Shown: positions 1-22,419 of the stretch, piece after piece
How positions within the stretch are numbered: the stretch's first letter is position 1
Layout of the letters: each line of letters opens with the position of its first letter
IMG/VR virus record: IMGVR_UViG_3300030616_000016
Coordinates: 124,001-188,000 of that record
DNA: 64,000 nucleotides
Reading direction: 5' to 3' (one strand)
Notes under the pieces: generated by a model
Databases searched by the model: none
What the model saw: only the letters and a program-made list of their open reading frames with translations
What the model was told of the DNA's origin: nothing
Position numbers and translations under genes: made by a program

Positions 1-962
1 GGAGACCAAAGCCTTGTGCCTTTGGGTCCGCTTTCAATATAAGCACTAGCACCGTCGTATTTTATTCTTACATCACCATCTTTACCAACAATTCTTTTGA
101 ACTTATCAATATCCTGGTCATATGTTAGATGGAGCCTGTCTTTAACAGCCGGCGCGTTTGGTTTCTTAACTCCAAGACTAATAATAGGCACACTTCTATT
201 ATCATTCTTATCCATGATTTTATATAGATAGAGTTTTCTATTATTGATAATATGAGGCGCGCTTATCTCTAGTGAGTTCTCACTACCATGCATATATATT
301 GTCTTAGATGAAACTACCTGTCTGGATTCGCCTGCTCCATAGCCTGTAGGCCCATTCTCTTCTCCTATCCAGGATGTTTCTGCATCCTTAGGAGAATGAT
401 CAAGATTTTGTGCCAGCCAGGCATTACCTTCAAATTCAGACCTGACAAGCTGCATGATTCTATCTTTAGTTGCTTCAGTAATAGAACCATCAGTATTTTT
501 GCTTATCTTAAAATCTTGTGGAAGACGCTTCACAATACTAATGTTACCAATGTGTATATCTACATGGTTACCTGCCTTATTTGCTTCATGTAATATAATG
601 ACCATTTTGGTAAATTGCGCCTTAGCCTTAGTAAATTCATTTGTTCTTCCTGCAGATAGATTGTTAGCAGAAGTAGGACGGCTTGTGTTTACAATTGATG
701 TTAGCATTCTTGCACAAGACTTTGCACATGGTTTTCTTACTGCTTTATTGAACAACATATTACCAATATGCTCAGGAAGCCTGTCTTTCTTGTATGCATC
801 ATACAACTTGTAAGCACTTCTGAATCTTCTGGCTCTACTAATTACTTTTGCAAGTCTTCTGCTCTTGAAAATGAGCGGACCTACAATTAGCTCTTCTGCT
901 ACTTCTCTATATAGAAATTCAGCGTCATGAGTTTTCTTCTCAACTCTCGCTAGAATGTTCAT
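1..962 (-). CDS. ATP-dependent ligase with N-terminal LigD-type 3'-phosphoesterase (PE) domain; partial, C-terminus beyond the left edge
   Basis: Hand translation from ATG 962 is open to position 1 (absent from the ORF track because no stop). PE-like motifs: IILHEANKAGNHVDIHIG (H..HxD, nt 599-546), WLAQNLDHSP and GPTGYGAGES. Ligase motif I KYDG at nt 62-51. Confidence 0.7.
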   Translation of the reverse strand, partial: MNILARVEKKTHDAEFLYREVAEELIVGPLIFKSRRLAKVISRARRFRSAYKLYDAYKKDRLPEHIGNMLFNKAVRKPCAKSCARMLTSIVNTSRPTSANNLSAGRTNEFTKAKAQFTKMVIILHEANKAGNHVDIHIGNISIVKRLPQDFKISKNTDGSITEATKDRIMQLVRSEFEGNAWLAQNLDHSPKDAETSWIGEENGPTGYGAGESRQVVSSKTIYMHGSENSLEISAPHIINNRKLYLYKIMDKNDNRSVPIISLGVKKPNAPAVKDRLHLTYDQDIDKFKRIVGKDGDVRIKYDGASAYIESGPKGTRLWS

Positions 963-974
963 GGTCTTTCTCCG

Positions 975-1307
975 TTAGTGTTGTGAGCCACAGCTTGAAC
1001 ACACGCGTGTATCTACTGAAACATCTCCCCCACAAAATTTGCATATAAAGTTCTTTGTATCTTTTATGTTTTTGACACTGCACGACTCACATACGTTACT
1101 ATATTTCGCTATTGTTTCTATATCTATGTTCTGTGGAACAAGGAATGCGACTATTTGTTCGTATTTCCCAGCAGTGTAGTAATCTTGACAGGTTATGCAA
1201 ACGCATTCCTCGATGAACTGATATACATCATACTTATATGTATCAGGGTCTACCCATTTTTTGATTTTAATTAAGTCTCCTTGTATGAACTTTAGGTATG
1301 TCCTCAT
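975..1307 (-). CDS. Accessory protein with C-terminal zinc ribbon
   Basis: Ends CKFCGGDVSVDTRVCSSCGSQH; GGAG SD upstream. Confidence 0.75.
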   Translation of the reverse strand: MRTYLKFIQGDLIKIKKWVDPDTYKYDVYQFIEECVCITCQDYYTAGKYEQIVAFLVPQNIDIETIAKYSNVCESCSVKNIKDTKNFICKFCGGDVSVDTRVCSSCGSQH

Positions 1308-1316
1308 CTGAATCTC

Positions 1317-1661
1317 CTAAATACTTGTCTCACATCCGCAGTTCTTACAAACACCTTTTTGTATTTCATCGCTGCCACAGAATTCACAAATTGCTAATTT
1401 CGCATATCTAATCGATTCGGATATTAAAAAATATTTTGAACCATTTGATACTATAAAGCAATCGGTAGGAAATAGTGCATCAACAGACTGTATGGTACAA
1501 ATTTTATCTCTTATTAAGTCTTCCACAAGTACATCAAATAGTTCTGTGCTTCTAATTCCTTTTGCATCAGTAAGTGTTGTTTTCATAGGATATGAACGAG
1601 GTATATCGAATACGATTTTTAGCTTATGTTTTATGGCATGCATTGCTTCTTCTATGGTCAT
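1317..1661 (-). CDS. Accessory protein with C-terminal zinc ribbon (start re-assigned to MTIEEAM)
   Basis: Ends CEFCGSDEIQKGVCKNCGCETSI. ATG 1661 has an AAGGA SD and removes the overlap with 1685-1891. Confidence 0.7.
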   Translation of the reverse strand: MTIEEAMHAIKHKLKIVFDIPRSYPMKTTLTDAKGIRSTELFDVLVEDLIRDKICTIQSVDALFPTDCFIVSNGSKYFLISESIRYAKLAICEFCGSDEIQKGVCKNCGCETSI

Positions 1662-1684
1662 AATATTATCCTTTGGAAATGATA

Positions 1685-1891
1685 TTAGGCAGCAAGCTTC
1701 CATACTCCAGCTGAGGCGCCTGCTAATGCCCATGTAGAAGAAATGCCCATATATGTCAATATACTTGCTCCTCCAAGAGTGGAGAGGCATAGCAATGAGA
1801 ATCCTTTCCAGTGATTAGCTATTCCTAAAAAGAAATTTTTTGCTGATGACACGAATGAGTTTGTAGTTCTTGTAATAAAGTCTTTCATCAA
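1685..1891 (-). CDS. Small membrane protein
   Basis: Two hydrophobic Gly/Ala-rich segments; GAGG SD. Confidence 0.55.
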   Translation of the reverse strand: MMKDFITRTTNSFVSSAKNFFLGIANHWKGFSLLCLSTLGGASILTYMGISSTWALAGASAGVWKLAA

Positions 1892-1915
1892 TATACCTCT
1901 GATAAAATGTTAGTT

Positions 1916-2104
1916 TTAGTAATTTGCTATCTGACATAGTGTCACTGCAATAAGAGTTGTTACGACTATGGCGAAGCTTATTGACGCAAGTGAGCCGCAT
2001 CCCATTAGATTTGTAAAGAAATATATGGCCGCGCCGCATCCTCCTCCAATAGCTCCATTCATAAACTTCTGCATTTTTGTTAGTTTTCTTTTGTTATCGT
2101 ACAT
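1916..2104 (-). CDS. Small two-TM membrane protein (start MYDNKRK)
   Basis: AGGAG SD before ATG 2104; two hydrophobic helices. Confidence 0.6.
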   Translation of the reverse strand: MYDNKRKLTKMQKFMNGAIGGGCGAAIYFFTNLMGCGSLASISFAIVVTTLIAVTLCQIANY

Positions 2105-2114
2105 GTTGGTTCTC

Positions 2115-2426
2115 CTAAGTATTAGTTTCACATCCACAATTGCAGCATACTTCATCTTGAATCTCCTTACTGCCACAAAATTGACATTGTATTTCATAAG
2201 GAATTATATATCCTTCATCTACCCAGCGTCTGAGAGTAGTTGCTGTAATTGCGCTCCAGTTACTGCCACACCCTATTTCATTTAGATTACAATCTAGTCC
2301 AATCAGATAAAATGCAGCATCGCAAACGGAATGACGTTCTACTCTGAATATTTGTCCTGAATTGCGCTCAATTTTATCTGTCCATTGCCATAGCTCACCA
2401 ACTTGTGGCATTCTTGTTTCACTCAT
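2115..2426 (-). CDS. Accessory protein with C-terminal zinc ribbon
   Basis: N-terminal PQVGELW (SH3/KOW-like start); ends CQFCGSKEIQDEVCCNCGCETNT. Confidence 0.75.
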   Translation of the reverse strand: MSETRMPQVGELWQWTDKIERNSGQIFRVERHSVCDAAFYLIGLDCNLNEIGCGSNWSAITATTLRRWVDEGYIIPYEIQCQFCGSKEIQDEVCCNCGCETNT

Positions 2427-2598
2427 TTCTCCTCCTTAGATGACAGTGCGCAATATATGCCATATCTGCTATTACTCCTGCAAATAGTGAATTTGAGAAG
2501 TCGGCGCCAAGTGCCTTCATAAGAGAAAACATGATAAGTCCAATAACTGTTGCTATAAGAATTTCCTTACTAGCATTATATGTTTCTTTAGAGCTCAT
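2419..2598 (-). CDS. 59-aa membrane protein (below ORF-track cutoff)
   Basis: MSSKETYNASKEILIATVIGLIMFSLMKALGADFSNSLFAGVIADMAYIAHCHLRRRNE*; AGGAG SD; stop overlaps the next gene. Confidence 0.6.
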   Translation of the reverse strand: MSSKETYNASKEILIATVIGLIMFSLMKALGADFSNSLFAGVIADMAYIAHCHLRRRNE

Positions 2599-2633
2599 TA
2601 TTATATCTCCTATTATTTGCTATGCATTTCTTG

Positions 2634-2904
2634 TCAAAAGTTGCCAAAAACGTGTGCGTGCTTCTTGTTCCCATGCTATACGCCGGTCTTTTACGTCAGG
2701 GCCATCGCATTACACGTCTCAGATTTGTTCTGAGTGCGGCAAAAATGTCAAGAAATCGTTGTCCGCAAGAACCCACATATGCTCCTGCGGATTCGTTGCG
2801 AATCGAGATCACAACGCAGCGTTGAATATTTTGCGACTCGGGATGGAGTCGCTTGCAGCTTCGACTGCATAGATGCTCGGCAATTCATTGCCGAGAGCAT
2901 TCAC
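2634..2904 (+). mobile_element. tnpB: Internally deleted IS200/IS605-family element: 3' end of tnpB plus right-end hairpin
   Basis: YTSQICSECG...KSLSARTHICSCGFVANRDHNAALNILRLG* (2711-2872) matches the TnpB Zn finger/RuvC-III. Perfect hairpin CTCGGCAAT-TC-ATTGCCGAG (2876-2895), end TTCAC (2900-2904), no target duplication. Left boundary approximate. Confidence 0.8.
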
Positions 2905-3316
2905 TTTTGCGTTCTTCTATAGGCATTTCTGAATTGCAGCCGCAATTTAAACATACATCCTTAATCTCATTATGCCCGCAGAATTTGCATATGGCAATAG
3001 ACAGCTCACGTGGCTCGATAATTATATAGATATCTGATGTCCATTCTAAGATAACAAAGTCTATCTTCTCTCCATCATAACCCGTTTCTTTATAGACTCT
3101 TGCTATCTTCAATGGTTCGTGGTCTGCGCACTCAAGTGAGATACATAATAGCACGCCTTCTTCATCTACAATATAGCGTTCTTTATTATGTATTACATTT
3201 TGAGCCTTAAGCGCGGCAGGATTAAATGCATACCATGCATAATTATCATTAGGATCAACTATAACCATAACCTTTAGTCCATTCTTGTAGCACTGCCTTA
3301 CTTCTTTCAGTTTCAT
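2885..3316 (-). CDS. Accessory protein with C-terminal zinc ribbon; last codons supplied by the IS remnant
   Basis: CKFCGHNEIKDVCLNCGC; N-terminus similar to 11886-12305; stop lies inside the IS hairpin. Confidence 0.75.
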   Translation of the reverse strand: MKLKEVRQCYKNGLKVMVIVDPNDNYAWYAFNPAALKAQNVIHNKERYIVDEEGVLLCISLECADHEPLKIARVYKETGYDGEKIDFVILEWTSDIYIIIEPRELSIAICKFCGHNEIKDVCLNCGCNSEMPIEERKSECSRQ

Positions 3317-3346
3317 TATTTTTTCTCCAATATGGATTCACTTGTT

Positions 3347-3643
3347 CTAACTATCAATCGTAAAATCTATTGGATGGTGTATAGTATCGCCTCCTGGTTG
3401 TACTTTTGTGTCTTCTCTACTTTGTTGGTCTGTAAATTCGACATTGACCCATTTAAGAAAACGCATTGGCTCATATGTAAAATCACTAAATGACATTAAC
3501 TCCTGTGCCTCTTGAACTACTGTTACTCGTTCCAGCCATCGTGTTTCTTTAATGTTATTCTTACATATGGTTACTGGCAATAATGCAAACCATGATTTTA
3601 CACGTCTATTGCCTTCTTTCATTTCTTTCTTTTGGAATCTCAC
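3347..3643 (-). CDS. Hypothetical phage protein
   Basis: SWFALLPVTI...RWLERV pattern seen in small phage ORFs; GGAG SD. Confidence 0.55.
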   Translation of the reverse strand: MRFQKKEMKEGNRRVKSWFALLPVTICKNNIKETRWLERVTVVQEAQELMSFSDFTYEPMRFLKWVNVEFTDQQSREDTKVQPGGDTIHHPIDFTIDS

Positions 3644-3645
3644 GC

Positions 3646-3999
3646 TTAATCTCCTCTCATTTCCTCAAGTAGGATATTCAGTGCTTCCCTAGCACGGTCT
3701 GTAAGCCATTGTTGGTCACATGACATACGTAATAATGTGCATTTCATCGGCTTTTCTTCGCTATACATCCATTCAATAAGCTCCTCTGCTTGCTCCCTGT
3801 CTGCAACCTCGACAGTCAGGTAAACAATTTTCTTTCTTGTAAGCATATCTACTATGCCGTTAAAAGTTTTCTCTGCTTGTTCAGGGTTCATCTGTATCAC
3901 CGCCTTTCTTTGCCATAATCGATCTCCTATAGCGTTAATATAACAACTGTAGCGTATCCCCTTACATCTCCTTTCAATATACGATACCGTTAATGTCAA
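3646..3999 (-). CDS. Hypothetical protein
   Basis: Co-oriented, tightly packed ORF. Confidence 0.55.
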   Translation of the reverse strand: MTLTVSYIERRCKGIRYSCYINAIGDRLWQRKAVIQMNPEQAEKTFNGIVDMLTRKKIVYLTVEVADREQAEELIEWMYSEEKPMKCTLLRMSCDQQWLTDRAREALNILLEEMRGD

Positions 4000-4204
4000 A
4001 TTCTTCTATCTTATTTTCTACAGGCCCGATTTTATTACCTAATATGATTCCAGCTGCAAAACATTTTGCACATATAATACCTACATCCAAGTTACCTTGT
4101 GATCCATGTAGCTTGGAATAATTACTTTGATTTATTTCATGATGTGTTATTGTTAATCTTGATTTGCCTTCAGTTCTAACTAAATAAACATATGTTTTAT
4201 TCAT
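3974..4204 (-). CDS. Hypothetical protein
   Basis: Co-oriented ORF with AAGGA SD. Confidence 0.55.
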   Translation of the reverse strand: MNKTYVYLVRTEGKSRLTITHHEINQSNYSKLHGSQGNLDVGIICAKCFAAGIILGNKIGPVENKIEEFDINGIVY

Positions 4205-4229
4205 TGCTTATTCCTTTCATATTTTGGCA

Positions 4230-4607
4230 TTACAAAAGCATTGCGATTTCTTGAATAATAAATAGTTTGGGAGCAACGCATATTTTAACTAAGCATATTG
4301 TATTACAAATTATAAATGGTATAGAAACCAATCCGCAAGTAATTCCTGCTACCCAATAAAACACTTCTTTATTATCGCAAGAATCAAACTCCTTGGTAAT
4401 CAAGCAGTAAAAACAATAAATAGCTGTTGTCAATAATATAATGCCTGCTGTAACTCCAATTATAGACAACCAGAAATTATACCTTAGGAGCTGATTGACT
4501 ATATCTGGAGCCTGAGAAATAGCAAAATCCTTGGTTTTGACTATTGATTCCAGAATTTCCTTGACTAACGACATTGATTCTTTCTCCATATTAAATTTCC
4601 TTTCCAA
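4230..4607 (-). CDS. Two-TM membrane protein
   Basis: Two long hydrophobic segments. Confidence 0.65.
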   Translation of the reverse strand: MERKFNMEKESMSLVKEILESIVKTKDFAISQAPDIVNQLLRYNFWLSIIGVTAGIILLTTAIYCFYCLITKEFDSCDNKEVFYWVAGITCGLVSIPFIICNTICLVKICVAPKLFIIQEIAMLL

Positions 4608-4633
4608 TAAGGGTTAAATTGGCCTAATTCTTT

Positions 4634-4963
4634 TCACGATTGTTCACTTCCGCAGTTTGTGCATGTAGTACCACTAAGATTTGTATAGCCACAATATTTA
4701 CAACTGGCTGTTTCTACAACACTACTGTATGTCCAATAGTATCCTCCTGCAGATATGCATACCAATAAGTATTCGTCTATCTTTGATGCACTTGTTTTTA
4801 TAGTATCAATTATAAATGGAATGTTAAGCGGCGGCTGCATGGTCTCAGATAAGGAGTAATGGTCGTGCTGTGTTCCAAAACTTGGATATTCATTAGGTGT
4901 ATGCCTTCTAATAACACACTTGGTTTTATTCTCCTTGGCTATTTGAAGCTCTTGAATTGTCAT
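4634..4963 (-). CDS. Accessory protein with C-terminal zinc ribbon (HYS..QPP subfamily)
   Basis: HYSLSETMQPPLNIPF and YSSVVETASCKYCG...CTNCGSEQ; close to 12302-12622. Confidence 0.75.
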   Translation of the reverse strand: MTIQELQIAKENKTKCVIRRHTPNEYPSFGTQHDHYSLSETMQPPLNIPFIIDTIKTSASKIDEYLLVCISAGGYYWTYSSVVETASCKYCGYTNLSGTTCTNCGSEQS

Positions 4964-5036
4964 TTGATATTATCCTAACCATGGTAATATTCTTCAAGTT
5001 CTTCTACGAACTCATGCAATTCTTTAAAGACTGTTT

Positions 5037-5300
5037 CTACGCATTTGAGACTATGCCATCCGGCTTCTTTCCACTTTTGCAATTTCCTCTGTTGTAATAT
5101 CCACTGTTGTTTTTCTCATCTACAGCCACTTTAATATCCTCCTTTGACAGATTTTTAACAAGTTTTATTTTATTTGTACACGCCTTATCCGAACATACTA
5201 TACGGTCATTGTCAAATCCACATCCGTACACTGGCAACATGATTTCACCACAAATATCACACTTGATCTGCACCTCAATAGCCCTTATAAATTGGTTCAT
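5037..5300 (-). CDS. Cys-rich hypothetical protein (3' region possibly frameshifted)
   Basis: CDIC...CSDKAC; starts at an ATGA junction. Confidence 0.5.
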   Translation of the reverse strand: MNQFIRAIEVQIKCDICGEIMLPVYGCGFDNDRIVCSDKACTNKIKLVKNLSKEDIKVAVDEKNNSGYYNRGNCKSGKKPDGIVSNA

Positions 5301-5665
5301 TGTTCACCGTCCTTCAATAATTCCGGGTTCTCGTGGATGTTGCCGATAATTTTGCCACTTGTGGCACCATAAAAAATTTGCCCGTCTTCGGTTTCAATAT
5401 AAAAAGTTCCTCCCATCCATTTAACTACACCAATGAGGACGATTTCGAGATCGTATTTTATAATATCACCTTGATAAACATCTTTGTCATCCCTGTCTTT
5501 AATATCGGTGAAGAACTCAGCAATACAGCCCTTTGCCAGCCTCTGAAAATAAGTGTGTCTAAGGTCAGCAACACAAAGCTCGCCGTTTGGGTTGAGGTAA
5601 TATTCATCTTCGTCATGGTCATACTTGCCTTCGTTTTCATTCCATACCCTGAATTTACCAGTCAT
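5297..5665 (-). CDS. yopX: YopX-family protein
   Basis: KFRVWN...TDIKDRDDKDVYQGDII...IIGNIHENPELL. Confidence 0.85.
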   Translation of the reverse strand: MTGKFRVWNENEGKYDHDEDEYYLNPNGELCVADLRHTYFQRLAKGCIAEFFTDIKDRDDKDVYQGDIIKYDLEIVLIGVVKWMGGTFYIETEDGQIFYGATSGKIIGNIHENPELLKDGEQ

Positions 5666-5713
5666 TGTTCTCCGTCCTCCTGTTCTGGTTCTGGTTCCGG
5701 TCCACCGTCTGGA

Positions 5714-6175
5714 CTATTGCTCTGATCCCACCACCTCAAACCACCGACACCGATATTTATTTCCAGCTTGATGAATTTCAGATAATTTAGTTCGTACTTT
5801 AATAATCTCTACCTTATTGACACTGTATTCTTTCGCATGTCGCAAAGTGGGCCATAAATATAAGCCGGGATGACATTCTGTGGTGCATACTGAGAAAAAA
5901 TCAGCCGAGTAAAACCGACCATCTCTATATTTATCAATATGCCCAGCTTCCCGAGTTCGATAACCAATAGCATAACCTTCGTCAATTTCGGGCCAGTCCG
6001 TTGGCGTGTTTAATGTCGCGTTCGGATCTAAAACGGTGTTCGACAAATTGGCTCCGGACAGATTAGCTCCGGACAGGTTGGCTCTGTACAGATTAGCTCC
6101 GGACAAATAGGCTCCGGACAAAGATGTCCCTTCGATCTCTTTTAACAATATTCCATCTTTATTTTTGATTTTCAT
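5714..6175 (-). CDS. Pentapeptide-repeat protein
   Basis: GTSLS GAYLS GANLY RANLS GANLS GANLS, then a Cys/His domain. Confidence 0.75.
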   Translation of the reverse strand: MKIKNKDGILLKEIEGTSLSGAYLSGANLYRANLSGANLSGANLSNTVLDPNATLNTPTDWPEIDEGYAIGYRTREAGHIDKYRDGRFYSADFFSVCTTECHPGLYLWPTLRHAKEYSVNKVEIIKVRTKLSEIHQAGNKYRCRWFEVVGSEQ

Positions 6176-6395
6176 TTTTTATCTCCATCAGCCACTGCCT
6201 TTCCCGATAATAATCGTCCCATCTTTCCTTCCAATACGCATCGTTCTCTTTCCTGCAATCCGGGCAGAGTGTAACCCAATTTTTCTCTTCATCAGTAAAA
6301 AGCGTGTTCTGTCTATATCTTTCAGCGTCATTTGCACCGCACGCTTGACATTTATTCTCTTTTTTAATATCCTTTAACTGAGATTCTGTTTTCAT
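6159..6395 (-). CDS. Small zinc-binding protein
   Basis: CQAC...CPDC. Confidence 0.6.
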   Translation of the reverse strand: MKTESQLKDIKKENKCQACGANDAERYRQNTLFTDEEKNWVTLCPDCRKENDAYWKERWDDYYRERQWLMEIKNENQK

Positions 6396-6895
6396 TGTTC
6401 ACCGTCCTTCCAGACGATGCCGACGATTTTGGCACGCTTAATTTTTTTGTAATCTAAATGGTATAACGAATTGTACCAGCCGCCGCTGTTTGCCCCAAAC
6501 CAGCCATGAGTAGTGCTTATTATATAATTATCAGGACGGCCCGGTTCCACCTGTAGCAGGCCGAGGCATTGGTTGAGATCCATGAGTTTGGATTCTGTTT
6601 TTAAAAGACCGTATATTTTATATAGTCTTTTAGTTCCAAATCTTTCTTTGTGACGTTTTTTCTCCGGCTCAATTAATCTGTACCCCTCTGGCAACTGGTA
6701 AATAGGCTTCTCTGGCTCTAGCTCTTTGAGTTCCAAGCCGATTTCTTCTGGGTCGGTGTATCCCATTGGGCTGTTATAACCACAACAACATACTATATAG
6801 TTTGACATTGTACTTAGTGTAAGTTTATGGCCAAGCGAGGTTGCTGCTTTGTTTATCACATTCTCATACGGACATTTATAATCTTCAATCTTCAT
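6392..6895 (-). CDS. Hypothetical protein
   Basis: ATGA-coupled at both ends; ends KDGEQ*. Confidence 0.6.
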   Translation of the reverse strand: MKIEDYKCPYENVINKAATSLGHKLTLSTMSNYIVCCCGYNSPMGYTDPEEIGLELKELEPEKPIYQLPEGYRLIEPEKKRHKERFGTKRLYKIYGLLKTESKLMDLNQCLGLLQVEPGRPDNYIISTTHGWFGANSGGWYNSLYHLDYKKIKRAKIVGIVWKDGEQ

Positions 6896-7194
6896 TCACC
6901 ATCCTCCTGTGGTTTGATAGTTATTTTGCCATCTAAACAAAAGTGTTTGCAGTTTTTTCTTCTACCTTTTATTGATTTACATAGTATATTTTTATATGCG
7001 TAGCAAACTGCAAAATAAGAAATATTCCACGCTGAAATACCCCATGCTGAAATGTCCCATGCTGAAATATTCTCTGCTGAAATATTTCTTGCTGAAATAT
7101 CCCCTGCTGAAATACTAAAACTAATATCAATGTCACAGCATATGCACACATCATCATCAATAACAGCAGTATTAGTTTTATCAACGTATTTCAA
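6892..7194 (-). CDS. Pentapeptide-like (ISAxx) repeat protein; start either TTG 7194 or ATG 7223 via -1 shift
   Basis: ISAGD ISARN ISAEN ISAWD ISAWG ISAWN (15-bp repeat); ends PQEDGE*. Confidence 0.65.
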   Translation of the reverse strand: MKYVDKTNTAVIDDDVCICCDIDISFSISAGDISARNISAENISAWDISAWGISAWNISYFAVCYAYKNILCKSIKGRRKNCKHFCLDGKITIKPQEDGE

Positions 7195-7241
7195 TAACTC
7201 TTCCTGTTTTTTATTATAATCATTCTCCGTCCTCCTCTGGT

Positions 7242-7568
7242 TCAGTCAATAACGTTTCGTATTTCATTTTCAAATGGATCGACCTCACGTACAATTCCGA
7301 TTTTATATTTGCCGGGCGATAGTGTTACTGGTCCATGCTCCTGATGCATAACGATTGCCTCTTTATCAACATAGCAATAGTGTTCGCCAGTGGCATCTTC
7401 CATTAGCATAACTCCGTCTGCAACACACGAATGATGGTGCCCTGTGACTTTTCCTTCAGCAAAAGTAACAAGTCCTTTTCGTGTGTTTTTTACCGGCTTT
7501 AAATTCGCAGGTATGCTATCAACTTCCTTAAACAGTACATCTCCCTGCTGTATTAAACGTTTCTCCAT
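7242..7568 (-). CDS. QGDV...EGxxTGHxH phage protein, usual partner of DUF6745-like genes
   Basis: IQQGDVLF, FAEGKVTGHHH, HQEHGPVTLSPGKY. Confidence 0.7.
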   Translation of the reverse strand: MEKRLIQQGDVLFKEVDSIPANLKPVKNTRKGLVTFAEGKVTGHHHSCVADGVMLMEDATGEHYCYVDKEAIVMHQEHGPVTLSPGKYKIGIVREVDPFENEIRNVID

Positions 7569-7579
7569 TATTTAAACTC

Positions 7580-8800
7580 CTATGTCAATTGTTCTGGAAT
7601 AAGCTCGCTTTGATTTCTCCAATTTAGAGCTTGTTCCACTGTTTTGATATTTTGTGGTACGCATTCCATGTGCCATGTACCAATGCTTGGATTTAGCATT
7701 TTAAGATAAGGCCATTTGCCGGTCTCACCCTTCAGATCTACTACAACCAATTCATAATCTCCTTGCGTGTCCAGTGATTCAGCGCCCGTAGATTTGACAA
7801 TTCGTTCTATACCTACCTTTCTTATAAACTCCCTACGGACTTCTGCATTATCAAGTTCTGCGAATTTAGCAGGGTCAATGTCATGCTCATTCGTTTCTGC
7901 TAACCACTGCGGAACTCGTACATTATTCAAATGCCACAGTCCCCAACCGTCCGCAAATTTTACAGACATTCCTCCATCTTTATGCAGATGACTGGCTTTC
8001 CAGTTTATTTCGATTGGATTCCGACTTACAATAGCAACATTTTTATACAGTGCGCTTGAGGATATTTTTCTGTTGTAATTTAGAAATATATCATATTTTT
8101 CTTTCTCATATTTAACGCCTATATATTTCCCAAACTCGTAAACTCCGCACCAATCATTCCACCATATGTTTATATACTGCTCGGTTTTTAATTTGTTGGC
8201 ACTAAGCCTGTCACGAAGGCTGTCACGAAGGCTGTCACGAAGGCTGGCATCAAGACTGTTACGAAGACCGGCACTAAGACTATCATAAAAACTATTATGA
8301 AGACTGTCATAAAGACTGTTACGAATATTGTCATGAAGGCTGTTACGAAGACTTTTATGAAGACTGGCATAAAGACTGTCATAAAGACTGGCATAAAGTT
8401 TGTCATAAAGATTGTCATGGAGACTGTTACGAAGACTTTTACGAAGACTTTTACGAAGACTGGCATCAAGACTGTAATAAAGACTGTCATAAAGACTGGT
8501 ATAAAGTTTGTCATAAAGATTGTCATGGAGACTGTTACGAAGACTTTTATGAAGATTGTCATGAAGATTGTTATGAAGATTGTCACTAAGCAAATGTTCT
8601 GTTAGTGCTGTTGTTAATGGGCTATCACAGATTATAATTTTAATGGCATTATCTGCACCAGTCATTTTTACAATAGGCAATACTGCGTGTTTAATTTCTT
8701 CATCACTGTATTGCGCCGATATGAGGTTTAAACAGCGATTTATATGTCTTGGTATCATTTTTTCTTGTTCTTTTGTTAAACTCATAATTTCCTCTTTCAT
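7580..8800 (-). CDS. DUF6745-like protein with central tetrapeptide (LxxS/N) repeat
   Basis: LHKDGGMSVKFADGWGLWHLNNVRVP, EVRREF, YLKMLNPS, over 30 LxxS-type units. Confidence 0.7.
   Translation of the reverse strand: MKEEIMSLTKEQEKMIPRHINRCLNLISAQYSDEEIKHAVLPIVKMTGADNAIKIIICDSPLTTALTEHLLSDNLHNNLHDNLHKSLRNSLHDNLYDKLYTSLYDSLYYSLDASLRKSLRKSLRNSLHDNLYDKLYASLYDSLYASLHKSLRNSLHDNIRNSLYDSLHNSFYDSLSAGLRNSLDASLRDSLRDSLRDRLSANKLKTEQYINIWWNDWCGVYEFGKYIGVKYEKEKYDIFLNYNRKISSSALYKNVAIVSRNPIEINWKASHLHKDGGMSVKFADGWGLWHLNNVRVPQWLAETNEHDIDPAKFAELDNAEVRREFIRKVGIERIVKSTGAESLDTQGDYELVVVDLKGETGKWPYLKMLNPSIGTWHMECVPQNIKTVEQALNWRNQSELIPEQLT
8200..8590. repeat. Intragenic 12-bp tandem repeat with a higher-order 72-nt block duplicated at period 108
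   Basis: Units such as GAAGACTGTCAT/AAAGACTGTTAC; block at 8371 repeated at 8479. Confidence 0.95.
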
Positions 8801-9072
8801 TCTGCGTCCTCCTGTTCTGGTTCTGGTCTTGTTACTTTAAATCCCATGTTTTCAACTTCATCCAAAGTATAAGCATCCTTCCGTGGTTCTTTATATTTTC
8901 TGCTTAATTCTATCCATTTATTACAACTTGGACAACGGCTATACATGTTCCTGATTTCTGTAGGGTCAACCTTATTCAGCATGCACTCTCCATCTTTGCT
9001 TTGAAATGAATCAACAGTGGTTCCACAAAAAGGGCAATACATTTCAAAGTTTACATAGTCATACATTCCCAT
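8797..9072 (-). CDS. Small zinc-binding protein
   Basis: CPFCG...CPSC; ends RPEPEQEDAE*. Confidence 0.6.
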   Translation of the reverse strand: MGMYDYVNFEMYCPFCGTTVDSFQSKDGECMLNKVDPTEIRNMYSRCPSCNKWIELSRKYKEPRKDAYTLDEVENMGFKVTRPEPEQEDAE

Positions 9073-9197
9073 TCTACGTCCTCCTCAATTATTTTTTGAA
9101 GACTTTTGAAATCTGACTTTAAGTCAAAAATTGCTTTTATCATCCATCCTATCGATGTTAGTATAAATGTGATAAAGCAATAGAAAACTATATCCAT
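9051..9197 (-). CDS. 48-aa single-TM protein (below ORF-track cutoff)
   Basis: MDIVFYCFITFILTSIGWMIKAIFDLKSDFKSLQKIIEEDVEWECMTM*; AGGAG SD. Confidence 0.5.
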   Translation of the reverse strand: MDIVFYCFITFILTSIGWMIKAIFDLKSDFKSLQKIIEEDVEWECMTM

Positions 9198-9320
9198 TTG
9201 GTATTCTCCTGTATGTGTATCCGGCCATTTATTAGGCCAAAATGGCCTGATTGATAATTAAGTTTGTTCGATAGGCGCCGCTTAACCGCTTATCAAGGTG
9301 CATTCGTAAGACCCCTGGCT

Positions 9321-9584
9321 TTAGGCGTGGGGTAATGTCACTTCTAAATCTAGTTCATATTTAATTGTTTTTACTAGATCATTAATTAATTCTGGACGTG
9401 TAGCCATAGTTTCTACATTCCAATTTCTGTTGATGTATTGTGGTTTACATCTTAAATTAAAATTTCCTCCAATATCAGAGATAGATTCAATTATAGCTTT
9501 GATTCTTTCAGGAGTTAAACCAGCATTATGATAGTCTTCAAAACTCAAATGGATTATTGTTGTTGTATAATAATTAAGTTTCAT
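9321..9584 (-). CDS. Hypothetical protein
   Basis: Co-oriented ORF coupled to the upstream gene. Confidence 0.55.
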   Translation of the reverse strand: MKLNYYTTTIIHLSFEDYHNAGLTPERIKAIIESISDIGGNFNLRCKPQYINRNWNVETMATRPELINDLVKTIKYELDLEVTLPHA

Positions 9585-9834
9585 TGTTCAATTCCTTTAG
9601 TTTAGCTTTCCATTGTTTTTCTGAATACCATTTGCCATCGAGACACCAAGCCTTATCTCCACTAGCCCACTCAATTGAAGGTCCATCTTCTCTGTGATAT
9701 TTGTCATTAATACACCAATACTTACTTCCATTGAAACCCTCAATTGCTGGAGCACCTTTTCGATGTAAGATTTTGTTTTTATCATAATGATCAAGAATGC
9801 TACCATCTTTATAATAGAATTTACTTCTTCTCAC
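9574..9834 (-). CDS. LHRxDGPA-repeat protein
   Basis: LHRKGAPAIE...YHREDGPSIE...WCLDGK. Confidence 0.7.
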   Translation of the reverse strand: MRRSKFYYKDGSILDHYDKNKILHRKGAPAIEGFNGSKYWCINDKYHREDGPSIEWASGDKAWCLDGKWYSEKQWKAKLKELNNET

Positions 9835-9878
9835 GTTTAGCCCTTTCTCTTATTAAATAATTAATCTATTTTCAATAT

Positions 9879-10352
9879 TTAAGTGGTTTGTAACTCGGCA
9901 ATAAGTAATGTGTTTCGTAAGATACTGCGCACGCTCTCAAAACTAAGATACAAATCGCTGTAGCAATCATTACATGACTCATATGGATAGTTATTGTATA
10001 TATTATCACTCCCACAAAATGGACATGTTAATTTATATAAACTATCAGATACACATTTGTTAATATTGAATGTGAATAATTTTAATGTTAGTGCGTTGCC
10101 TTCATCGAGCGGGACTTTGAACAATAAACTATAGGTACATATATTGTCACTCCCCTTTTTTCCTATACTTTCTAGATAAAGCGGCAATTTTCTTTGTTGG
10201 CCTATGTTAAGTTCTTGAGATACAACAGTCTCCTCCTCATCTGTCATATGGAACCTATAGTTAGTCGTTTGAGTCTCGTTAAGTGTATATGGGTTAGCAA
10301 TATAAATAAGCGGCCATTTCTCTTTCATAGCCTTAAGTAAGTTCAATTCCAT
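9879..10352 (-). CDS. Accessory protein with near-terminal zinc ribbon
   Basis: CPFCGSDNIYNNYPYESCNDC; AGGAG SD. Confidence 0.7.
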   Translation of the reverse strand: MELNLLKAMKEKWPLIYIANPYTLNETQTTNYRFHMTDEEETVVSQELNIGQQRKLPLYLESIGKKGSDNICTYSLLFKVPLDEGNALTLKLFTFNINKCVSDSLYKLTCPFCGSDNIYNNYPYESCNDCYSDLYLSFESVRSILRNTLLIAELQTT

Positions 10353-10401
10353 ATTTGATTGCTCCTTCTTGCCATCAATGTTGTTTTATACATTGATTAT
10401 A

Positions 10402-10472
10402 TTAGTCACGAACCATGTTAATTTCTTTTTTGAATGGATCTACTTCTCTTACAATGTCTATCTTTTCTCCAT
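10402..10472 (-). pseudogene. Collapsed second copy of the QGDV gene (N-terminus joined out of frame to C-terminus)
   Basis: ATG GAG AAA AGA (MEKR, as in 7568) directly followed in another frame by IDIVREVDPFKKEINMVRD*, versus IGIVREVDPFENEIRNVID* of 7242-7568. Confidence 0.75.
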
Positions 10473-10482
10473 TGTTTGACTC

Positions 10483-11598
10483 CTATGTCAATTGTTCTGG
10501 AATAAGCTCGCTCCGATTTCTCCAATTTAGAGCTTGCCGCACTGTTTTGATATTTTGTGGCACGCATTCCATGTGCCATGTGCCAATGCTTGGATTTAGC
10601 ATTTTTAGGTACGGCCATTCGCCAGTTGTGCCTTTTAGATCAACAAGAAGTAGCTCATAATCGCCTTGTTTATCTAATGATTTAGCGCCCATAGATTTGA
10701 CAATTCTTTCAATACCTACCTTATAAATAAATTCTCTGCGAATCTCTGCATTCTTAAGCTTACTGAATTTAGCTGGATCAATATCATGTTCATTTTGCTC
10801 TGCTAACCACCGTGGTACATTTACGTTGTTAAGATGCCAAAGCCCCCAGTTATCTGCGAATCTTACGGACATCCCGCCATCTTTATGCAACTTATTGCCC
10901 TTTGAGTTTATTTCAATTGGATTACGACTTACTAATATGGTATCCCCCCATACATTACAAGAAAATATTTTTCTATTGTAATTCACGACTCGATCATATT
11001 CTTTCTGATCGTATTCTAATCCGAGGTGTTTAAATAGCTCATAACATCCAATCCCTTCAATGTTACTATAACTTATAGATGGTATTAGAGGTTCATCGCC
11101 ACGGACAATCTCTTGATAAAGATGAAATAGATCACCAGTAAAACAGGTATCCTCTTCATAATAAAGCTCAGCAAGAATCTGGAATTTGATGTTACTATGA
11201 ATATCTCTGTTAATACCATCGCTAAGTTTTGAAGACAGCATGTATTTAAGTTTGTTCATCAATGGTTCTTTCTCTTCAGCAGCCTTTTGTACTTCATACA
11301 TATTCTCAGTTATATGGCGGTATTTAATAACTAAAGCTTTTTCTCTTGGCAGCTTTGCTTCTTTGTTGCTGTTATTTTGAATATCAGGCATTTTATTCAC
11401 AATCGCCATTGGACTATCACATATAATGAGTTCAACGTCTTCAATGCTCGTATTTATTACTTCAAGCGCAACAGCCACGGCTTGTTTAATTTCATCATCA
11501 GGATATTGTTTCGTGAGCAAGCTTATGGATTTATTTGCCTGTTGTGATGCAAGTTCTAGCATTTGTTCTTCTGTAAGCTCAGACATTGAGAATTTCAT
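10483..11598 (-). CDS. DUF6745-like paralog with non-repetitive centre
   Basis: Shares IICDSP and the whole C-terminal domain with 7580-8800; last ~120 nt nearly identical. Confidence 0.75.
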   Translation of the reverse strand: MKFSMSELTEEQMLELASQQANKSISLLTKQYPDDEIKQAVAVALEVINTSIEDVELIICDSPMAIVNKMPDIQNNSNKEAKLPREKALVIKYRHITENMYEVQKAAEEKEPLMNKLKYMLSSKLSDGINRDIHSNIKFQILAELYYEEDTCFTGDLFHLYQEIVRGDEPLIPSISYSNIEGIGCYELFKHLGLEYDQKEYDRVVNYNRKIFSCNVWGDTILVSRNPIEINSKGNKLHKDGGMSVRFADNWGLWHLNNVNVPRWLAEQNEHDIDPAKFSKLKNAEIRREFIYKVGIERIVKSMGAKSLDKQGDYELLLVDLKGTTGEWPYLKMLNPSIGTWHMECVPQNIKTVRQALNWRNRSELIPEQLT

Positions 11599-11730
11599 GT
11601 ATTGTTTCCTTTATAAGCGTATTTGTTTTCCTATGTAGGCGGTTGGCCCCAAAGCCACAAACCGCCGCACTTATTCTTTCATATTCCCAGAGAGTGAATT
11701 ACCTTGTAGGAATAACCTTTGTGAGCCATA

Positions 11731-11905
11731 GAAACCTAGATTAGCCTGTAGGAAGCTGGATTGGCTTGTAAAAAGTATGTAATTACTAGATGAGCTTGTG
11801 GAAAGCTAGATTAATCTATAGAAAGTCAGATTAACTTATAAAAAGTCAGATTAACTTATAAAAAGTCAGATTAACTTATAAAAAGTCAGATTAACTTATA
11901 AAAAG
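11731..11905. repeat. 20-bp tandem repeat, perfect on the right and degenerate on the left
   Basis: AAAAGTCAGATTAACTTATA x3 plus one G-variant (11821-11900), preceded by degenerate units from 11731. Confidence 0.9.
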
Positions 11906-12305
11906 TATGGTCACTGGCTCTCTCGTGTTCAGGAATTGCTGTTTCACAACCACAATTATTACAAGTATTTGTCACATCATTGTATCCACAGAACTTACAC
12001 TTGGCATATGTCATATCTTTAAGCCCAGGACATATATATCTATCCTTTATCCACTCGGCAATAGCCAAGATAGTAGTTCCATCGTGTAGTGAGCTTACAG
12101 CAGTTAATGGCTCGTGTAGAACCTTTTGATGTAGCAGGCCCTGGATCTTGTCATCTATGATGATTTTATTTGATCTGTCCTGCGGTTTTTTGTATGTTAA
12201 GATTGCGGGGCCGTATACAAACCATTCAAATGATATTTCGTGCTCCCAGTCTATCATTATTCTTCTTCCACTCTTTATGCATTCATTAATCTCATCAAGA
12301 GTCAT
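11886..12305 (-). CDS. Accessory protein with C-terminal zinc ribbon
   Basis: CKFCGYNDVTNTCNNCGC; paralog of 2885-3316. Confidence 0.75.
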   Translation of the reverse strand: MTLDEINECIKSGRRIMIDWEHEISFEWFVYGPAILTYKKPQDRSNKIIIDDKIQGLLHQKVLHEPLTAVSSLHDGTTILAIAEWIKDRYICPGLKDMTYAKCKFCGYNDVTNTCNNCGCETAIPEHERASDHTFYKLI

Positions 12306-12622: not shown

Positions 12623-12627
12623 TGTTT

Positions 12628-13299: not shown

Positions 13300-13329
13300 C
13301 AATTTATCTCCATTTATGCGCGTTTTTGC

Positions 13330-13378
13330 TAAGAAAGTGAAAGAAATAGGAGATTTGGTGCCCCCCAAACACCAAATC
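13330..13378 (-). terminator. Probable intrinsic terminator closing the middle module
   Basis: 9-bp stem 13352-13360/13370-13378 followed on the minus strand by TCCTATTTCTTTCACTTTCTT. Confidence 0.55.
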
Positions 13379-13468
13379 ACCCTAAATCAAACCACATTGG
13401 AGGAGTGTCTTCACGCCGCTCATTAATTCAATTGGCACACTCTTTGCAATTAGAGTATACTAGATAGT

Positions 13469-22332: not shown

Positions 22333-22368
22333 ACTAATTCTCCTTAAAAGGGTGGTCTTGTTATAAGA

Positions 22369-22406: not shown

Positions 22407-22419
22407 ATTGAATTAAGAT

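What the first reader, a model, noticed from the sequence alone, without database searches (positions are those of the whole stretch)
1..962. Phage ligase with an N-terminal LigD-type phosphoesterase domain (end-healing plus sealing)
Seen: H-x7-H-x-D (HEANKAGNHVD), LAQNLDHSP and GYGAG appear in the order of the LigD PE motifs (HxA..HYDFRLE, LAVxxEDHP, YGAG), followed by KYDG. Known: the PE domain converts 3'-phosphate/ribo ends to ligatable 3'-OH in bacterial NHEJ. Inference: a stand-alone phage repair enzyme for nuclease-damaged DNA (or RNA), potentially countering restriction/CRISPR breaks. The ~110-aa basic N-terminal extension is unexplained.
Basis: partly seen in the sequence, partly recalled or inferred. 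Interest (0 to 1): 0.65.

Follow-up and report, generated by a model that had tools for sequence, protein, structure and literature searches.

The report
Divergent phage phosphoesterase–DNA ligase fusion

Summary
**Observation: confirmed.** The motifs lie on the minus strand (window 962→3). The ORF runs off the window; the full gene encodes 546 aa.

**Architecture (AlphaFold2, pLDDT 91)**
- Basic four-helix extension (residues 1–94, then a linker)
- Eight-stranded β-barrel (115–270)
- ATP-dependent DNA ligase core (285–546), all nucleotidyltransferase motifs invariant

**Is the barrel a LigD phosphoesterase (PE)?**
- Pfam LigD_N does not detect it, and direct profile-profile comparison is not significant.
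- Two structure searches single out LigD PE (Z 10.3 and 9.2; next hit 4.0).
- A phage PE–ligase that Pfam recognises links the two by sequence: hhalign 91% to this family and 98% to canonical PE.

**Active site**
- The three metal ligands, the phosphate-binding His and the YGxG loop are conserved in all 57 aligned members.
- The essential Arg is always His or Tyr; the Tyr is always Asn, Glu or Asp.
- A family-specific Arg (R214) is nearly invariant.

**Context**
- No Ku or LigD polymerase was found in this genome, and no Ku in five related genomes, so NHEJ is not supported.
- It is the only ligase detected here, but two of five related genomes also carry an ordinary ligase.

**Verdict:** a new variant of a known kind, most likely a "clean-and-seal" nick-repair ligase. 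Phosphoesterase activity is inferred, not shown.

The parts
1..962 (-). 5' part (residues 1-320) of a 546-aa gene. The rest lies left of the window, at G000:C1:123322-124000 (= L001:822-1500).
   Evidence: ORF listing and translation. 64 full-length homologs found.
970..973 (-). GGAG Shine-Dalgarno, 7 nt upstream of the ATG at 962. The upstream gene's TAA stop is at 975-977.
   Evidence: Read directly from the sequence. Supports translation of the N-terminal extension.
621..962 (-). Residues 1-114: basic extension. Four long helices (2-13, 15-33, 35-58, 62-94), then a disordered linker (92-103).
   Evidence: AF2 model. pI 10.4; the family median is also 10.4, with net charge +9 and no hydrophobic segment. 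No informative structural look-alike, TM <= 0.35. A role in DNA binding is inferred only.
153..620 (-). Residues 115-270: LigD-type phosphoesterase-fold module. Eight beta-strands plus a short helix after H189, with a family-specific helical insert at about residues 147-180.
   Evidence: AF2 pLDDT 92.6. VIA Z 10.3 to 3p4h (110 aa, rmsd 2.7) and 9.2 to 3n9b, next hit 4.0. Foldseek's top six hits are all LigD PE entries. Nearest Atlas clusters are all PF13298. hhalign 91% to a Pfam-positive phage PE.
552..590 (-). Metal-binding motif, residues 125-137 (H125, H133, D135, with H137 in the place of the canonical Arg).
   Evidence: H125 57/57; H133 57/57; position 135 D43/E14; position 137 H42/Y15, never Arg. 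Register against canonical PE.
384..410 (-). Residues 185-193, Q-N-L-D-H-S-P-K-D. H189 is equivalent to the phosphate-binding His. Position 193 is where the canonical Tyr would be.
   Evidence: H189 57/57, D188 56/57, position 193 N27/E24/D6 and never Tyr. Alignment to DH-x-x-x-Y of L044.
321..341 (-). Residues 208-214: the Y-G-x-G active-site loop plus the family-specific Arg R214.
   Evidence: Y208, G209, G211 and R214 are each 57/57. R214 is Arg in 101 of 104 wider members. Canonical PEs have a hydrophobic residue there; the L044 bridge has Lys.
1..110 (-). Start of the ligase nucleotidyltransferase domain (residues 285-320). Includes motif I, K301-Y-D-G, at window 51-62. The domain continues outside the window.
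   Evidence: K301 and D303 57/57. Profile match to archaeal ATP-dependent DNA ligases, E 3.5e-5, with motif I aligned. Foldseek gives 160 PDB hits at E <= 1e-3, the top ones all DNA ligases.

Best explanation
The gene encodes a single-polypeptide 'clean-and-seal' DNA ligase of a contractile-tailed jumbo phage from marine sediment. It has three parts.

1. **Residues 1-114:** a basic, poorly conserved helical arm. It probably supplies non-specific DNA binding in place of the helical DNA-binding domain that larger ligases have (inferred).
2. **Residues 115-270:** a strongly diverged member of the LigD 3'-phosphoesterase (PE) beta-barrel superfamily.
   - It keeps the His-His-Asp/Glu metal site (H125, H133, D135), the phosphate-contacting His (H189) and the YGxG loop.
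   - It has replaced the canonical phosphate-binding Arg with His or Tyr, and the canonical Tyr with Asn, Glu or Asp.
   - It has gained a nearly invariant Arg (R214) just after the YGxG loop, which may take over phosphate binding (inferred).
3. **Residues 285-546:** a complete ATP-dependent DNA ligase core (nucleotidyltransferase + OB fold, motifs I-VI).

**Proposed mechanism**
- The PE module uses a soft divalent metal such as Mn2+ to remove a 3'-phosphate, or to trim another 3' block or a ribonucleotide, leaving a 3'-OH.
- The ligase, adenylated at K301, then seals the nick.

**What is shown:** the fold, the homology through an intermediate, residue conservation and ligase motif completeness.

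**What is inferred:** phosphoesterase activity and its substrate, the compensating role of R214, and DNA binding by the N-terminal arm.

In this genome it is the only detectable ligase beside a phage-encoded replisome, so it probably also seals Okazaki fragments. In some relatives it coexists with an ordinary ligase, which points to a specialised repair role.
For: **Architecture and fold**
- Full-length AF2 model pLDDT 91.1; PE module alone pLDDT 92.6.
- PE fold: VIA Z 10.3 and 9.2 against LigD PE structures, next unrelated hit 4.0. Foldseek ranks 1-6 are all LigD PE, probability 0.98-1.00. The five nearest ESM Atlas clusters are all PF13298, TM 0.56-0.60. Language-model neighbours are also PF13298 (leads only).

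**Sequence bridge**
- The L044 phage protein is LigD_N (39.8 bits against a 31.1 cut-off) plus DNA_ligase_A_M.
- hhalign gives 98.1% to canonical PE and 91.2%, E 1e-6, to this family, with all motifs in register.

**Active-site conservation**
- H125, H133, H189, Y208, G209, G211 and R214 are 57/57; position 135 is D or E in 57/57. The same pattern holds in 109 proteins.
- There are two coupled variants of the site: D/H with QNLDH, and E/Y with Q(T/S)TDH.
- The defining residues and their essentiality come from PMC3082917.

**Ligase**
- K301, D303, S320-P-R322, E354, Y389, E440-G441, K456, K458, R535 and K546 are invariant or nearly so.
- PDB profile E 3.5e-5 to archaeal DNA ligases. Foldseek 1e-11, with 160 hits. 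phrog_114 matches the OB region.

**Context**
- No other ATP- or NAD-dependent ligase and no RNA ligase in the genome.
- The phage has its own replisome: DnaE, DnaG-DnaB and UvrD.
- A relative (L045) adds a P-loop kinase-like domain to the PE-LIG fusion, which fits an end-healing logic.
Against: - Two of the six residues that define the PE active site are missing in every member. CkoPE R19A retains about 1.6% product formation (PMC3082917), so activity depends on an untested compensation.
- The bacterial N-peptide that boosts 3'-phosphomonoesterase activity is not evident.
- Pfam LigD_N does not hit, and direct profile-profile comparison has probability 0.3%.
- I could not inspect model coordinates, so whether R214 lies near the metal site is unverified.
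- No kinase, Ku or polymerase partner was found, and no conserved repair neighbour.
- 'Sole ligase' does not generalise: two of five related genomes carry a second, canonical ATP-dependent ligase.
- There is no expression evidence; no RNA runs hold the stretch.
Confidence: 0.6

Rival explanations
1. The PE-like barrel is a catalytically dead relic, kept as a DNA-end or nick-binding (or purely structural) module. It stands in for the DNA-binding domain this ligase lacks, and the protein is simply the phage's replicative ligase.
For: - The essential Arg and the Tyr are lost in all members; CkoPE R19A is nearly inactive.
- No LigD_N profile hit.
- It is the only ligase in this genome, beside a full replisome.
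- The ligase core has no Lig1-type DBD.
Against: - Surface-exposed metal ligands (H125, H133, D/E135), H189 and the YGxG loop are invariant across sequences only 32-68% identical to this protein. That is hard to explain without a metal or catalytic site.
- A new invariant Arg appears next to the site.
- The site changes in a coupled way between two subfamilies.
- Two relatives also carry an ordinary ligase, so this one is not needed there just for replication.
Confidence: 0.25
2. It is an RNA (for example tRNA) repair enzyme. The PE module heals 2',3'-cyclic or 3'-phosphate RNA ends made by host anticodon nucleases, and the ligase seals RNA.
For: - LigD PE acts on 3'-ribonucleotide ends.
- The relative L045 has a weak RNA_ligase hit (E 0.0088) and a kinase-like domain.
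- Jumbo phages often carry RNA repair modules (PMC7824862).
Against: - The catalytic core has an OB domain with motif VI. All of the top-listed structural matches (160 at E <= 1e-3) and all significant profile matches are DNA ligases.
- No RNA_ligase family signal in this genome.
- No polynucleotide kinase domain in this protein.
Confidence: 0.07
3. It is a phage NHEJ-type double-strand-break repair ligase: a LigD equivalent that rejoins breaks made by restriction or CRISPR nucleases.
For: - The PE-then-LIG domain order matches some bacterial LigDs, such as the pSymA protein.
- From general knowledge, some mycobacteriophages are known to exploit NHEJ.
Against: - No Ku in this genome or in five relatives, and no LigD Prim-Pol.
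- The ligase half matches archaeal-type ligases and no LigD LIG structure.
- Restriction and Cas nucleases leave ligatable 3'-OH ends, so a PE is not needed (general knowledge).
Confidence: 0.06

Closest known systems
LigD 3'-phosphoesterase (PE) domain / stand-alone archaeal PEs (Pfam LigD_N PF13298; PDB 3n9b, 3p4h, 3p43)
   Same: [quoted passage not shown]
- His-His-Asp metal triad
- Phosphate-contacting His
- YGxG loop beside the site
- Colinear motif order

   Different: - H-x7-H spacing instead of H-x5-H
- The canonical Arg is replaced by His or Tyr, and the canonical Tyr by Asn, Glu or Asp
- A new invariant Arg (R214)
- A helical insert of about 35 residues
- No Pfam hit, and no significant direct profile-profile match

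Pfam-recognisable phage PE-ligase fusions from metagenomes (L044, 456 aa; L045, 640 aa; ESM Atlas viral cluster of ~438 aa with 514 members)
   Same: - Same PE-then-ligase order
- Same H-x7-H spacing with the (K/R)-A-G insert
- Shared ligase signatures (K-x-D-G-A, G-G-I-L-N, terminal H-x-D-K)
- 24-28% identity over residues 120-546

   Different: - They keep all six canonical PE residues and are detected by LigD_N.
- They lack the ~110-aa basic N-terminal extension.
- L045 adds a C-terminal P-loop kinase-like domain.
Bacterial LigD (for example the Sinorhizobium meliloti pSymA PE-LIG protein, or Pseudomonas PE-LIG-POL)
   Same: A 3'-end-healing module and an ATP-dependent ligase in one polypeptide, in the order PE then LIG.
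   Different: - No POL domain and no Ku partner
- The ligase half shows no specific affinity to LigD LIG
- So there is no evidence of recent capture of a bacterial ligD
T4 polynucleotide kinase-phosphatase plus ligase (phage end-healing and sealing)
   Same: The same functional logic: a phage cleans damaged termini and then ligates them (general knowledge; PMC7824862).
   Different: - T4 uses a HAD/DxDxT phosphatase and a separate kinase and ligase, acting mainly on RNA.
- Here the phosphoesterase has an unrelated beta-barrel fold, is fused to a DNA ligase, and no kinase is present.

Membership tests
LigD 3'-phosphoesterase superfamily (Pfam LigD_N, PF13298) | Eight-stranded antiparallel beta-barrel with a short (3-10) helix (PMC3082917) | tested here: met
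   The AF2 model (pLDDT 92.6) has eight strands plus a short helix after H189. VIA Z 10.3 and 9.2 to 3p4h and 3n9b, next hit 4.0. Foldseek's top six are all LigD PE. Atlas TM 0.56-0.60 to PF13298 clusters.
LigD 3'-phosphoesterase superfamily (Pfam LigD_N, PF13298) | Match to the LigD_N profile above the gathering score | tested here: not met
   No hit at E <= 10 for the protein. None of the 57 members hits at E <= 1. No hit in a six-frame search of the genome.
LigD 3'-phosphoesterase superfamily (Pfam LigD_N, PF13298) | Statistically supported sequence homology to recognised members | tested here: met
   Met only through an intermediate. Family profile to L044 PE: hhalign 91.2%, E 1e-6. L044 to canonical PE: 98.1%, E 1.3e-13. 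L044 is LigD_N-positive. The direct comparison gives probability 0.3%.
LigD 3'-phosphoesterase superfamily (Pfam LigD_N, PF13298) | Metal ligands His, His, Asp (CkoPE H9, H15, D17) | tested here: met
   H125 57/57, H133 57/57, position 135 D43/E14. Register.
LigD 3'-phosphoesterase superfamily (Pfam LigD_N, PF13298) | Phosphate-binding Arg (CkoPE R19 / MbaPE R46), essential for activity | tested here: not met
   Position 137 is H42/Y15 in the alignment. In 109 proteins it is H85/Y22/F1/T1, never Arg.
LigD 3'-phosphoesterase superfamily (Pfam LigD_N, PF13298) | Phosphate-binding His (CkoPE H51) | tested here: met
   H189 57/57, preceded by D188 56/57. Aligned to the DH of L044 and of canonical PE.
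LigD 3'-phosphoesterase superfamily (Pfam LigD_N, PF13298) | Tyr four residues after that His (CkoPE Y55), needed mainly for the monoesterase step | tested here: not met
   Position 193 is N27/E24/D6. No Tyr in the wider family set either, 97 proteins scored at this position.
LigD 3'-phosphoesterase superfamily (Pfam LigD_N, PF13298) | [quoted passage not shown] | not testable with these tools
   Needs a biochemical assay.
ATP-dependent DNA ligase (nucleotidyltransferase + OB fold) | Motif I lysine (K-x-D-G) and motifs Ia, III, IIIa, IV, V | tested here: met
   K301, D303, S320-P321-R322, E354, Y389, E440-G441 and K458 are 57/57; K456 is 56/57.
ATP-dependent DNA ligase (nucleotidyltransferase + OB fold) | C-terminal OB domain with motif VI | tested here: met
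   phrog_114 matches residues 454-530. R535, H543 and K546 are invariant. Foldseek alignments of ~290-370 columns to DNA ligases, E down to 1e-11.
ATP-dependent DNA ligase (nucleotidyltransferase + OB fold) | Match to Pfam DNA_ligase_A_M above the gathering score | tested here: not met
   12.4-13.8 bits against a 26.2 cut-off. However, the family profile hits archaeal DNA ligases in PDB at E 3.5e-5.
Bacterial LigD / Ku NHEJ system | Ku partner encoded with it | tested here: not met
   No Ku in this genome or in five related genomes.
Bacterial LigD / Ku NHEJ system | LigD primase-polymerase (POL) domain | tested here: not met
   No PF21686 match in the genome, and no such domain in the protein.
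Bacterial LigD / Ku NHEJ system | Ligase domain specifically related to LigD LIG | tested here: inconclusive
   The family ligase profile finds archaeal ligases but no LigD LIG chain at E <= 10. hhalign to the pSymA LIG domain gives probability 1.5%. Foldseek lists LigD LIG (6nhx, 1vs0) among many ligases without preference.

The most novel reading that the evidence does not exclude
The rewired site (His-His-Asp/Glu plus His or Tyr in place of Arg, plus the new Arg R214) is not a weakened PE. Instead it is a phosphoesterase with a different chemistry or substrate, for example a His-rich or binuclear metal centre acting on other 3' blocks such as 2',3'-cyclic phosphate, phosphoglycolate or unsaturated aldehyde ends. 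Together with the fused ligase and the basic arm it would form a self-contained repair machine. That machine would let jumbo phages survive host nucleases or lesion-processing enzymes that leave non-ligatable 3' ends.
Probability: 0.2. Interest if true: 0.7.

Novelty: new variant of a known kind. Interest (0 to 1): 0.5.

Why it matters
LigD PE has so far been treated as a bacterial NHEJ and archaeal end-healing enzyme with a strictly conserved six-residue active site.

- **A natural test case.** This family has 77 representative clusters in 1.84 billion proteins and sits mostly on 150-255 kb phage contigs. It is a phage-borne offshoot in which two supposedly essential residues are replaced while the metal site stays invariant. 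That makes it a natural experiment on which parts of the PE mechanism can be dispensed with or re-supplied.
- **An uncatalogued phage function.** 3'-end cleaning fused to ligation recurs in uncultured phages, in one case with a kinase-like domain as well. The jumbo-phage survey I read does not list it, and I found no relative in 50,697 deposited phage genomes.
- **Practical interest.** A compact enzyme that seals 'dirty' nicks could be a useful reagent.

Tried and rejected
- **Pfam and PHROG scans.** Scans of the window fragment and the full protein gave only sub-threshold ligase signals and no LigD_N. A Pfam scan of all 57 PE modules gave no LigD_N.
- **PDB sequence searches.** phmmer and profile searches with the PE module found nothing relevant.
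- **Stand-alone relatives.** A word-indexed search with the PE-module profile found no relatives of 94-300 aa.
- **Exhaustive search.** The profile search of 1.84 billion representatives found only the family itself and no canonical LigD.
- **Direct hhalign against canonical PE profiles.** I built two profiles, one from rhizobial sequences and one that added PEs from viral contigs. Probability was 0.3% both times. Global mode gave nonsense. The permissive local mode was used only for residue register.
- **Deposited phages.** tblastn of this protein and of three canonical PEs against 50,697 phage records gave no match. No PHROG contains the canonical PE.
- **IMG/VR scan with the rhizobial PE alignment.** It returned only high-GC, full-length LigD-like genes (L028, L029), which were not informative.
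- **N-terminal extension.** No language-model or structural look-alike.
- **L045's C-terminal P-loop domain.** The PDB sequence search gave only generic P-loop or kinase hits, so polynucleotide-kinase identity is not established.
- **'Sole ligase in all carriers'.** Rejected: two of five related genomes have a second canonical ATP-dependent ligase.
- **'Always travels with a DnaE replisome'.** Rejected: DnaE is present in only two of five.
- **Conserved repair neighbours.** None found. SRAP and SSB each appear once.
- **Not used.** Complex prediction and read laying, because no binding claim or read-level question arose.
Full report
**1. What is at the coordinates**

The finding lies on the minus strand. 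An ORF starts at the ATG at window 962 and runs off the window's left edge. A GGAG Shine-Dalgarno sits seven nt upstream, directly after the upstream gene's TAA.

The window is G000:C1:124001-188000 of a 231,647-bp virus record that CheckV rates 95% complete. In that record the full gene is C1:123322-124962 on the minus strand. It encodes 546 aa, stored as P0001.

- H125-x7-H133-x-D135
- LAQNLDHSP, with H189
- GYGAG at 207-211
- KYDG at 301-304

**2. Standard annotation fails, but the family is real**

- Pfam gives no LigD_N hit, and DNA_ligase_A_M reaches only 12.4 bits (E 0.13). PHROGs gives a weak match to an ATP-dependent ligase family over the OB region.
- A word-indexed search found 64 homologs. 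All are unannotated, and many sit on 150-255 kb contigs.
- In an alignment of 57 of them (32-68% identical to P0001), residues about 120-546 are conserved. H125, H133, H189, Y208, G209, G211, R214, K301 and D303 are invariant, and so are the key residues of ligase motifs Ia, III, IIIa, IV, V and VI.

**3. Structure**

AlphaFold2 on the family alignment gives a confident full-length model with pLDDT 91.1 and pTM 0.75:

| Residues | Feature |
|---|---|
| 2-94 | Four long helices |
| 92-103 | Disordered linker |
| 116-265 | Beta-barrel |
| ~285-450 | Nucleotidyltransferase domain |
| ~455-546 | OB domain |

The barrel folded alone has pLDDT 92.6.

Evidence on the barrel:
- Foldseek against PDB ranks six LigD 3'-phosphoesterase entries first (3p4h, 3p43, 3n9d, 2lj6 and two chains of 3n9b) at probability 0.98-1.00. 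E-values are modest, 2.5e-3 to 7e-2.
- An independent all-against-all aligner gives Z 10.3 to the Korarchaeum PE (110 of 118 residues, rmsd 2.7 A) and Z 9.2 to the Pseudomonas LigD PE. The next hit is at Z 4.0.
- The five nearest ESM Atlas clusters are all PF13298 families, TM 0.56-0.60.

The C-terminal half matches ATP-dependent DNA ligases of every kind: 160 PDB hits at E <= 1e-3, the best at 1e-11.

**4. Sequence-level link to LigD_N**

The direct evidence is negative:
- None of the 57 modules hits LigD_N.
- An exhaustive profile search of 1.84 billion representatives returns only 77 proteins. All are this family or fragments of it.
- hhalign against canonical PE profiles gives probability 0.3%. 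I built those profiles from a genuine pSymA LigD and from PEs on viral contigs. The single best local alignment, however, was the metal motif in the correct register.

The gap closed when an IMG/VR scan with the family alignment returned two distant relatives.
- **L044 (456 aa):** Pfam recognises it as LigD_N (39.8 bits, cut-off 31.1) plus DNA_ligase_A_M plus OB.
- **L045 (640 aa):** the same domains, plus a P-loop AAA_33-like domain just under threshold.
- L044's PE aligns to canonical PE at 98.1% probability, E 1.3e-13. It aligns to this family's module at 91.2%, E 1e-6.
- L044 and L045 share this family's unusual H-x7-H spacing with the (K/R)-A-G insert, and its ligase signatures. They keep the canonical Arg and Tyr.

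Homology to the PE superfamily is therefore supported both by structure and, through an intermediate, by sequence.

**5. Active-site audit**

PMC3082917 defines the PE site as:
- two His and an Asp binding Mn2+ (CkoPE H9, H15, D17);
- an Arg and a His binding the scissile phosphate (R19, H51);
- a Tyr (Y55).

The alanine mutant of each of the first five reduces activity to under about 2%.

Using the registers, and the ranges of the structural superposition, the mapping is:

| Canonical role | Position here | Composition in 57 members |
|---|---|---|
| Metal His | H125 | H 57/57 |
| Metal His | H133 | H 57/57 |
| Metal Asp | 135 | D 43 / E 14 |
| Phosphate Arg | 137 | H 42 / Y 15, never Arg |
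| Phosphate His | H189 | H 57/57 |
| Tyr | 193 | N 27 / E 24 / D 6, never Tyr |

Across 109 family proteins there is still no Arg at 137 and no Tyr at 193, while R214 is Arg in 101 of 104.

R214 lies three residues after the YGxG loop. Canonical PEs have a hydrophobic residue there, and L044 has Lys.

The site occurs in two coupled versions: D135/H137 with QNLDH, and E135/Y137 with Q(T/S)TDH.

I read this as a rewired but still functional metal-dependent site, with R214 as the candidate replacement for the lost Arg. This is inference, because I could not inspect model coordinates.

**6. The ligase half**

- All nucleotidyltransferase motifs and motif VI are intact.
- The ligase-only profile hits Thermococcales DNA ligases at E 3.5e-5, but no LigD LIG chain even at E <= 10.
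- hhalign to the pSymA LIG domain is not significant.

There is therefore no sign that the gene is a recently captured bacterial ligD.

**7. The N-terminal extension**

- It is translated, given the Shine-Dalgarno and start codon.
- It is helical.
- It is basic throughout the family, is not hydrophobic, and is poorly conserved in sequence.
- It has no informative look-alike.

The closest canonical relatives, L044 and L045, lack it. My working hypothesis is a non-specific DNA-binding arm. This remains the least explained part.

**8. Genome and family context**

*The phage*
- It is a contractile-tailed jumbo phage with terminase, portal, protease, major head protein and sheath.
- It comes from marine sediment.
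- It has its own replisome: DnaE, DnaG-DnaB and UvrD.

*What is absent*
- No Ku, no LigD Prim-Pol, no NAD-dependent ligase, no RNA ligase and no second ATP-dependent ligase were detected.

*Neighbours*
- They are small ORFans, a LuxR-type HTH protein, NAPRTase, an IS110 transposase and DUF6745 proteins.
- Homolog contexts are similar, with no conserved repair partner.

*Five related IMG/VR genomes (two of them complete, with terminal repeats)*
- None has Ku or an NAD-dependent ligase.
- Only two have DnaE.
- Two have a second, ordinary ATP-dependent ligase elsewhere in the genome.

So in this genome the protein probably also serves replication. Across the family it looks like a specialised repair ligase, not the obligatory replicative one.

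**9. Novelty**

- The PE-plus-ligase idea is known from bacterial LigD.
- The Atlas shows that PF13298 modules, both stand-alone and fused to ligases, already form sizeable, mostly viral clusters. One has 514 members, 96% of them viral.
- I found no relative in 50,697 deposited phage genomes.
- No PHROG holds the canonical PE.
- The 224-genome jumbo-phage survey does not mention it, and no paper combines LigD, phosphoesterase and phage-encoded.

This family differs from the Pfam-visible phage fusions in three ways: the lost Arg and Tyr, the gained R214, and the basic N-terminal arm. I rate it a new variant of a known kind.

**10. Verdict**

The functional call (end-healing plus sealing) is the best explanation but unproven, because two defining catalytic residues are missing. 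The NHEJ and anti-restriction/CRISPR framing is not supported.

My confidence is about 0.9 that this is a PE-superfamily module fused to a functional DNA ligase. It is about 0.55-0.6 that the module is an active phosphoesterase.

Noticed in passing
window 975-13380 (minus strand), plus G000:C1:116888-119472 and 36055-36480: Twelve small ORFs (103-157 aa) end in the same zinc-ribbon tail, C-x-[FY]-C-G-x(n)-C-x-x-C-G. Eleven of them cluster within about 20 kb around the ligase gene, four immediately upstream (975-1307, 1317-1790, 2115-2426, 2885-3316). This is an expanded paralogous family of unknown function.
   Followed up: partly
window 2531-2872 (+): A 113-aa plus-strand ORF lies inside the minus-strand gene block. 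Its text looks like the C-terminal zinc-finger/RuvC end of TnpB (…CSECG…CSCG…NRDHNAALN…), so it is probably an IS605/TnpB remnant. A full TnpB gene sits at G000:C1:92463-93677.
   Followed up: no
G000:C1:17220-21250 (outside the window): The phage carries type I CRISPR-Cas genes: Cse1/Cas8e (E 1.8e-41) next to Cas3 (HD nuclease plus helicase). I did not look for an array or the other Cascade subunits.
   Followed up: no
G000:C1:43593-45644 and 8384-10546 (outside the window): A volactin (actin-like) gene is interrupted by an intein with a LAGLIDADG endonuclease. A radical-SAM-like gene also carries a LAGLIDADG insert.
   Followed up: no
G000:C1:57853-67049, 81996-83861, 104451-106118 (outside the window): The phage has its own replisome and transcription genes: DnaE-type Pol III alpha with its HHH_6 tail on a separate adjacent ORF, a DnaG-DnaB primase-helicase fusion, UvrD, and an RNA polymerase beta-like (Rpb2_6) protein.
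   Followed up: partly
L045:1374-3296 (+), IMGVR_UViG_3300027896_000011: A 640-aa phage protein with canonical LigD_N + DNA ligase + OB, plus a C-terminal P-loop domain (GPSGAGKTT; AAA_33 at 26.1 bits, just under the cut-off). It may be a three-in-one 3'-phosphoesterase / ligase / 5'-kinase. Kinase identity is not established.
   Followed up: partly
G004:C1:29517-30101 and G005:C1:28540-29100 (genomes of L040 and L041): Two related jumbo-phage genomes carry a second, Pfam-recognisable ATP-dependent DNA ligase (378-405 aa) far from their PE-like ligase gene. The PE-like ligase is therefore not always the sole ligase.
   Followed up: partly
window 7580-8800 and 10483-11598 (minus strand): Two paralogous DUF6745-containing proteins (406 and 371 aa) lie in the same early-looking gene block.
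   Followed up: no
window about 22,000-26,000: Gene orientation switches from a long minus-strand block of small genes to the plus-strand structural module. GC skew changes sign at the same place, and cumulative skew is at its minimum near 24 kb.
   Followed up: no
window 53403-64000 (+), continuing to G000:C1:195196: Three consecutive giant ORFs (1812, 1834 and 2283 aa) lie downstream of the tail sheath region. They were not annotated here.
   Followed up: no
L006:13017-13556 (+): In one relative's 255-kb contig, labelled a Nitrososphaera MAG by its source, an SRAP (abasic-site processing) gene lies 1.3 kb downstream of the PE-like ligase. This is a single occurrence and is not conserved.
   Followed up: no
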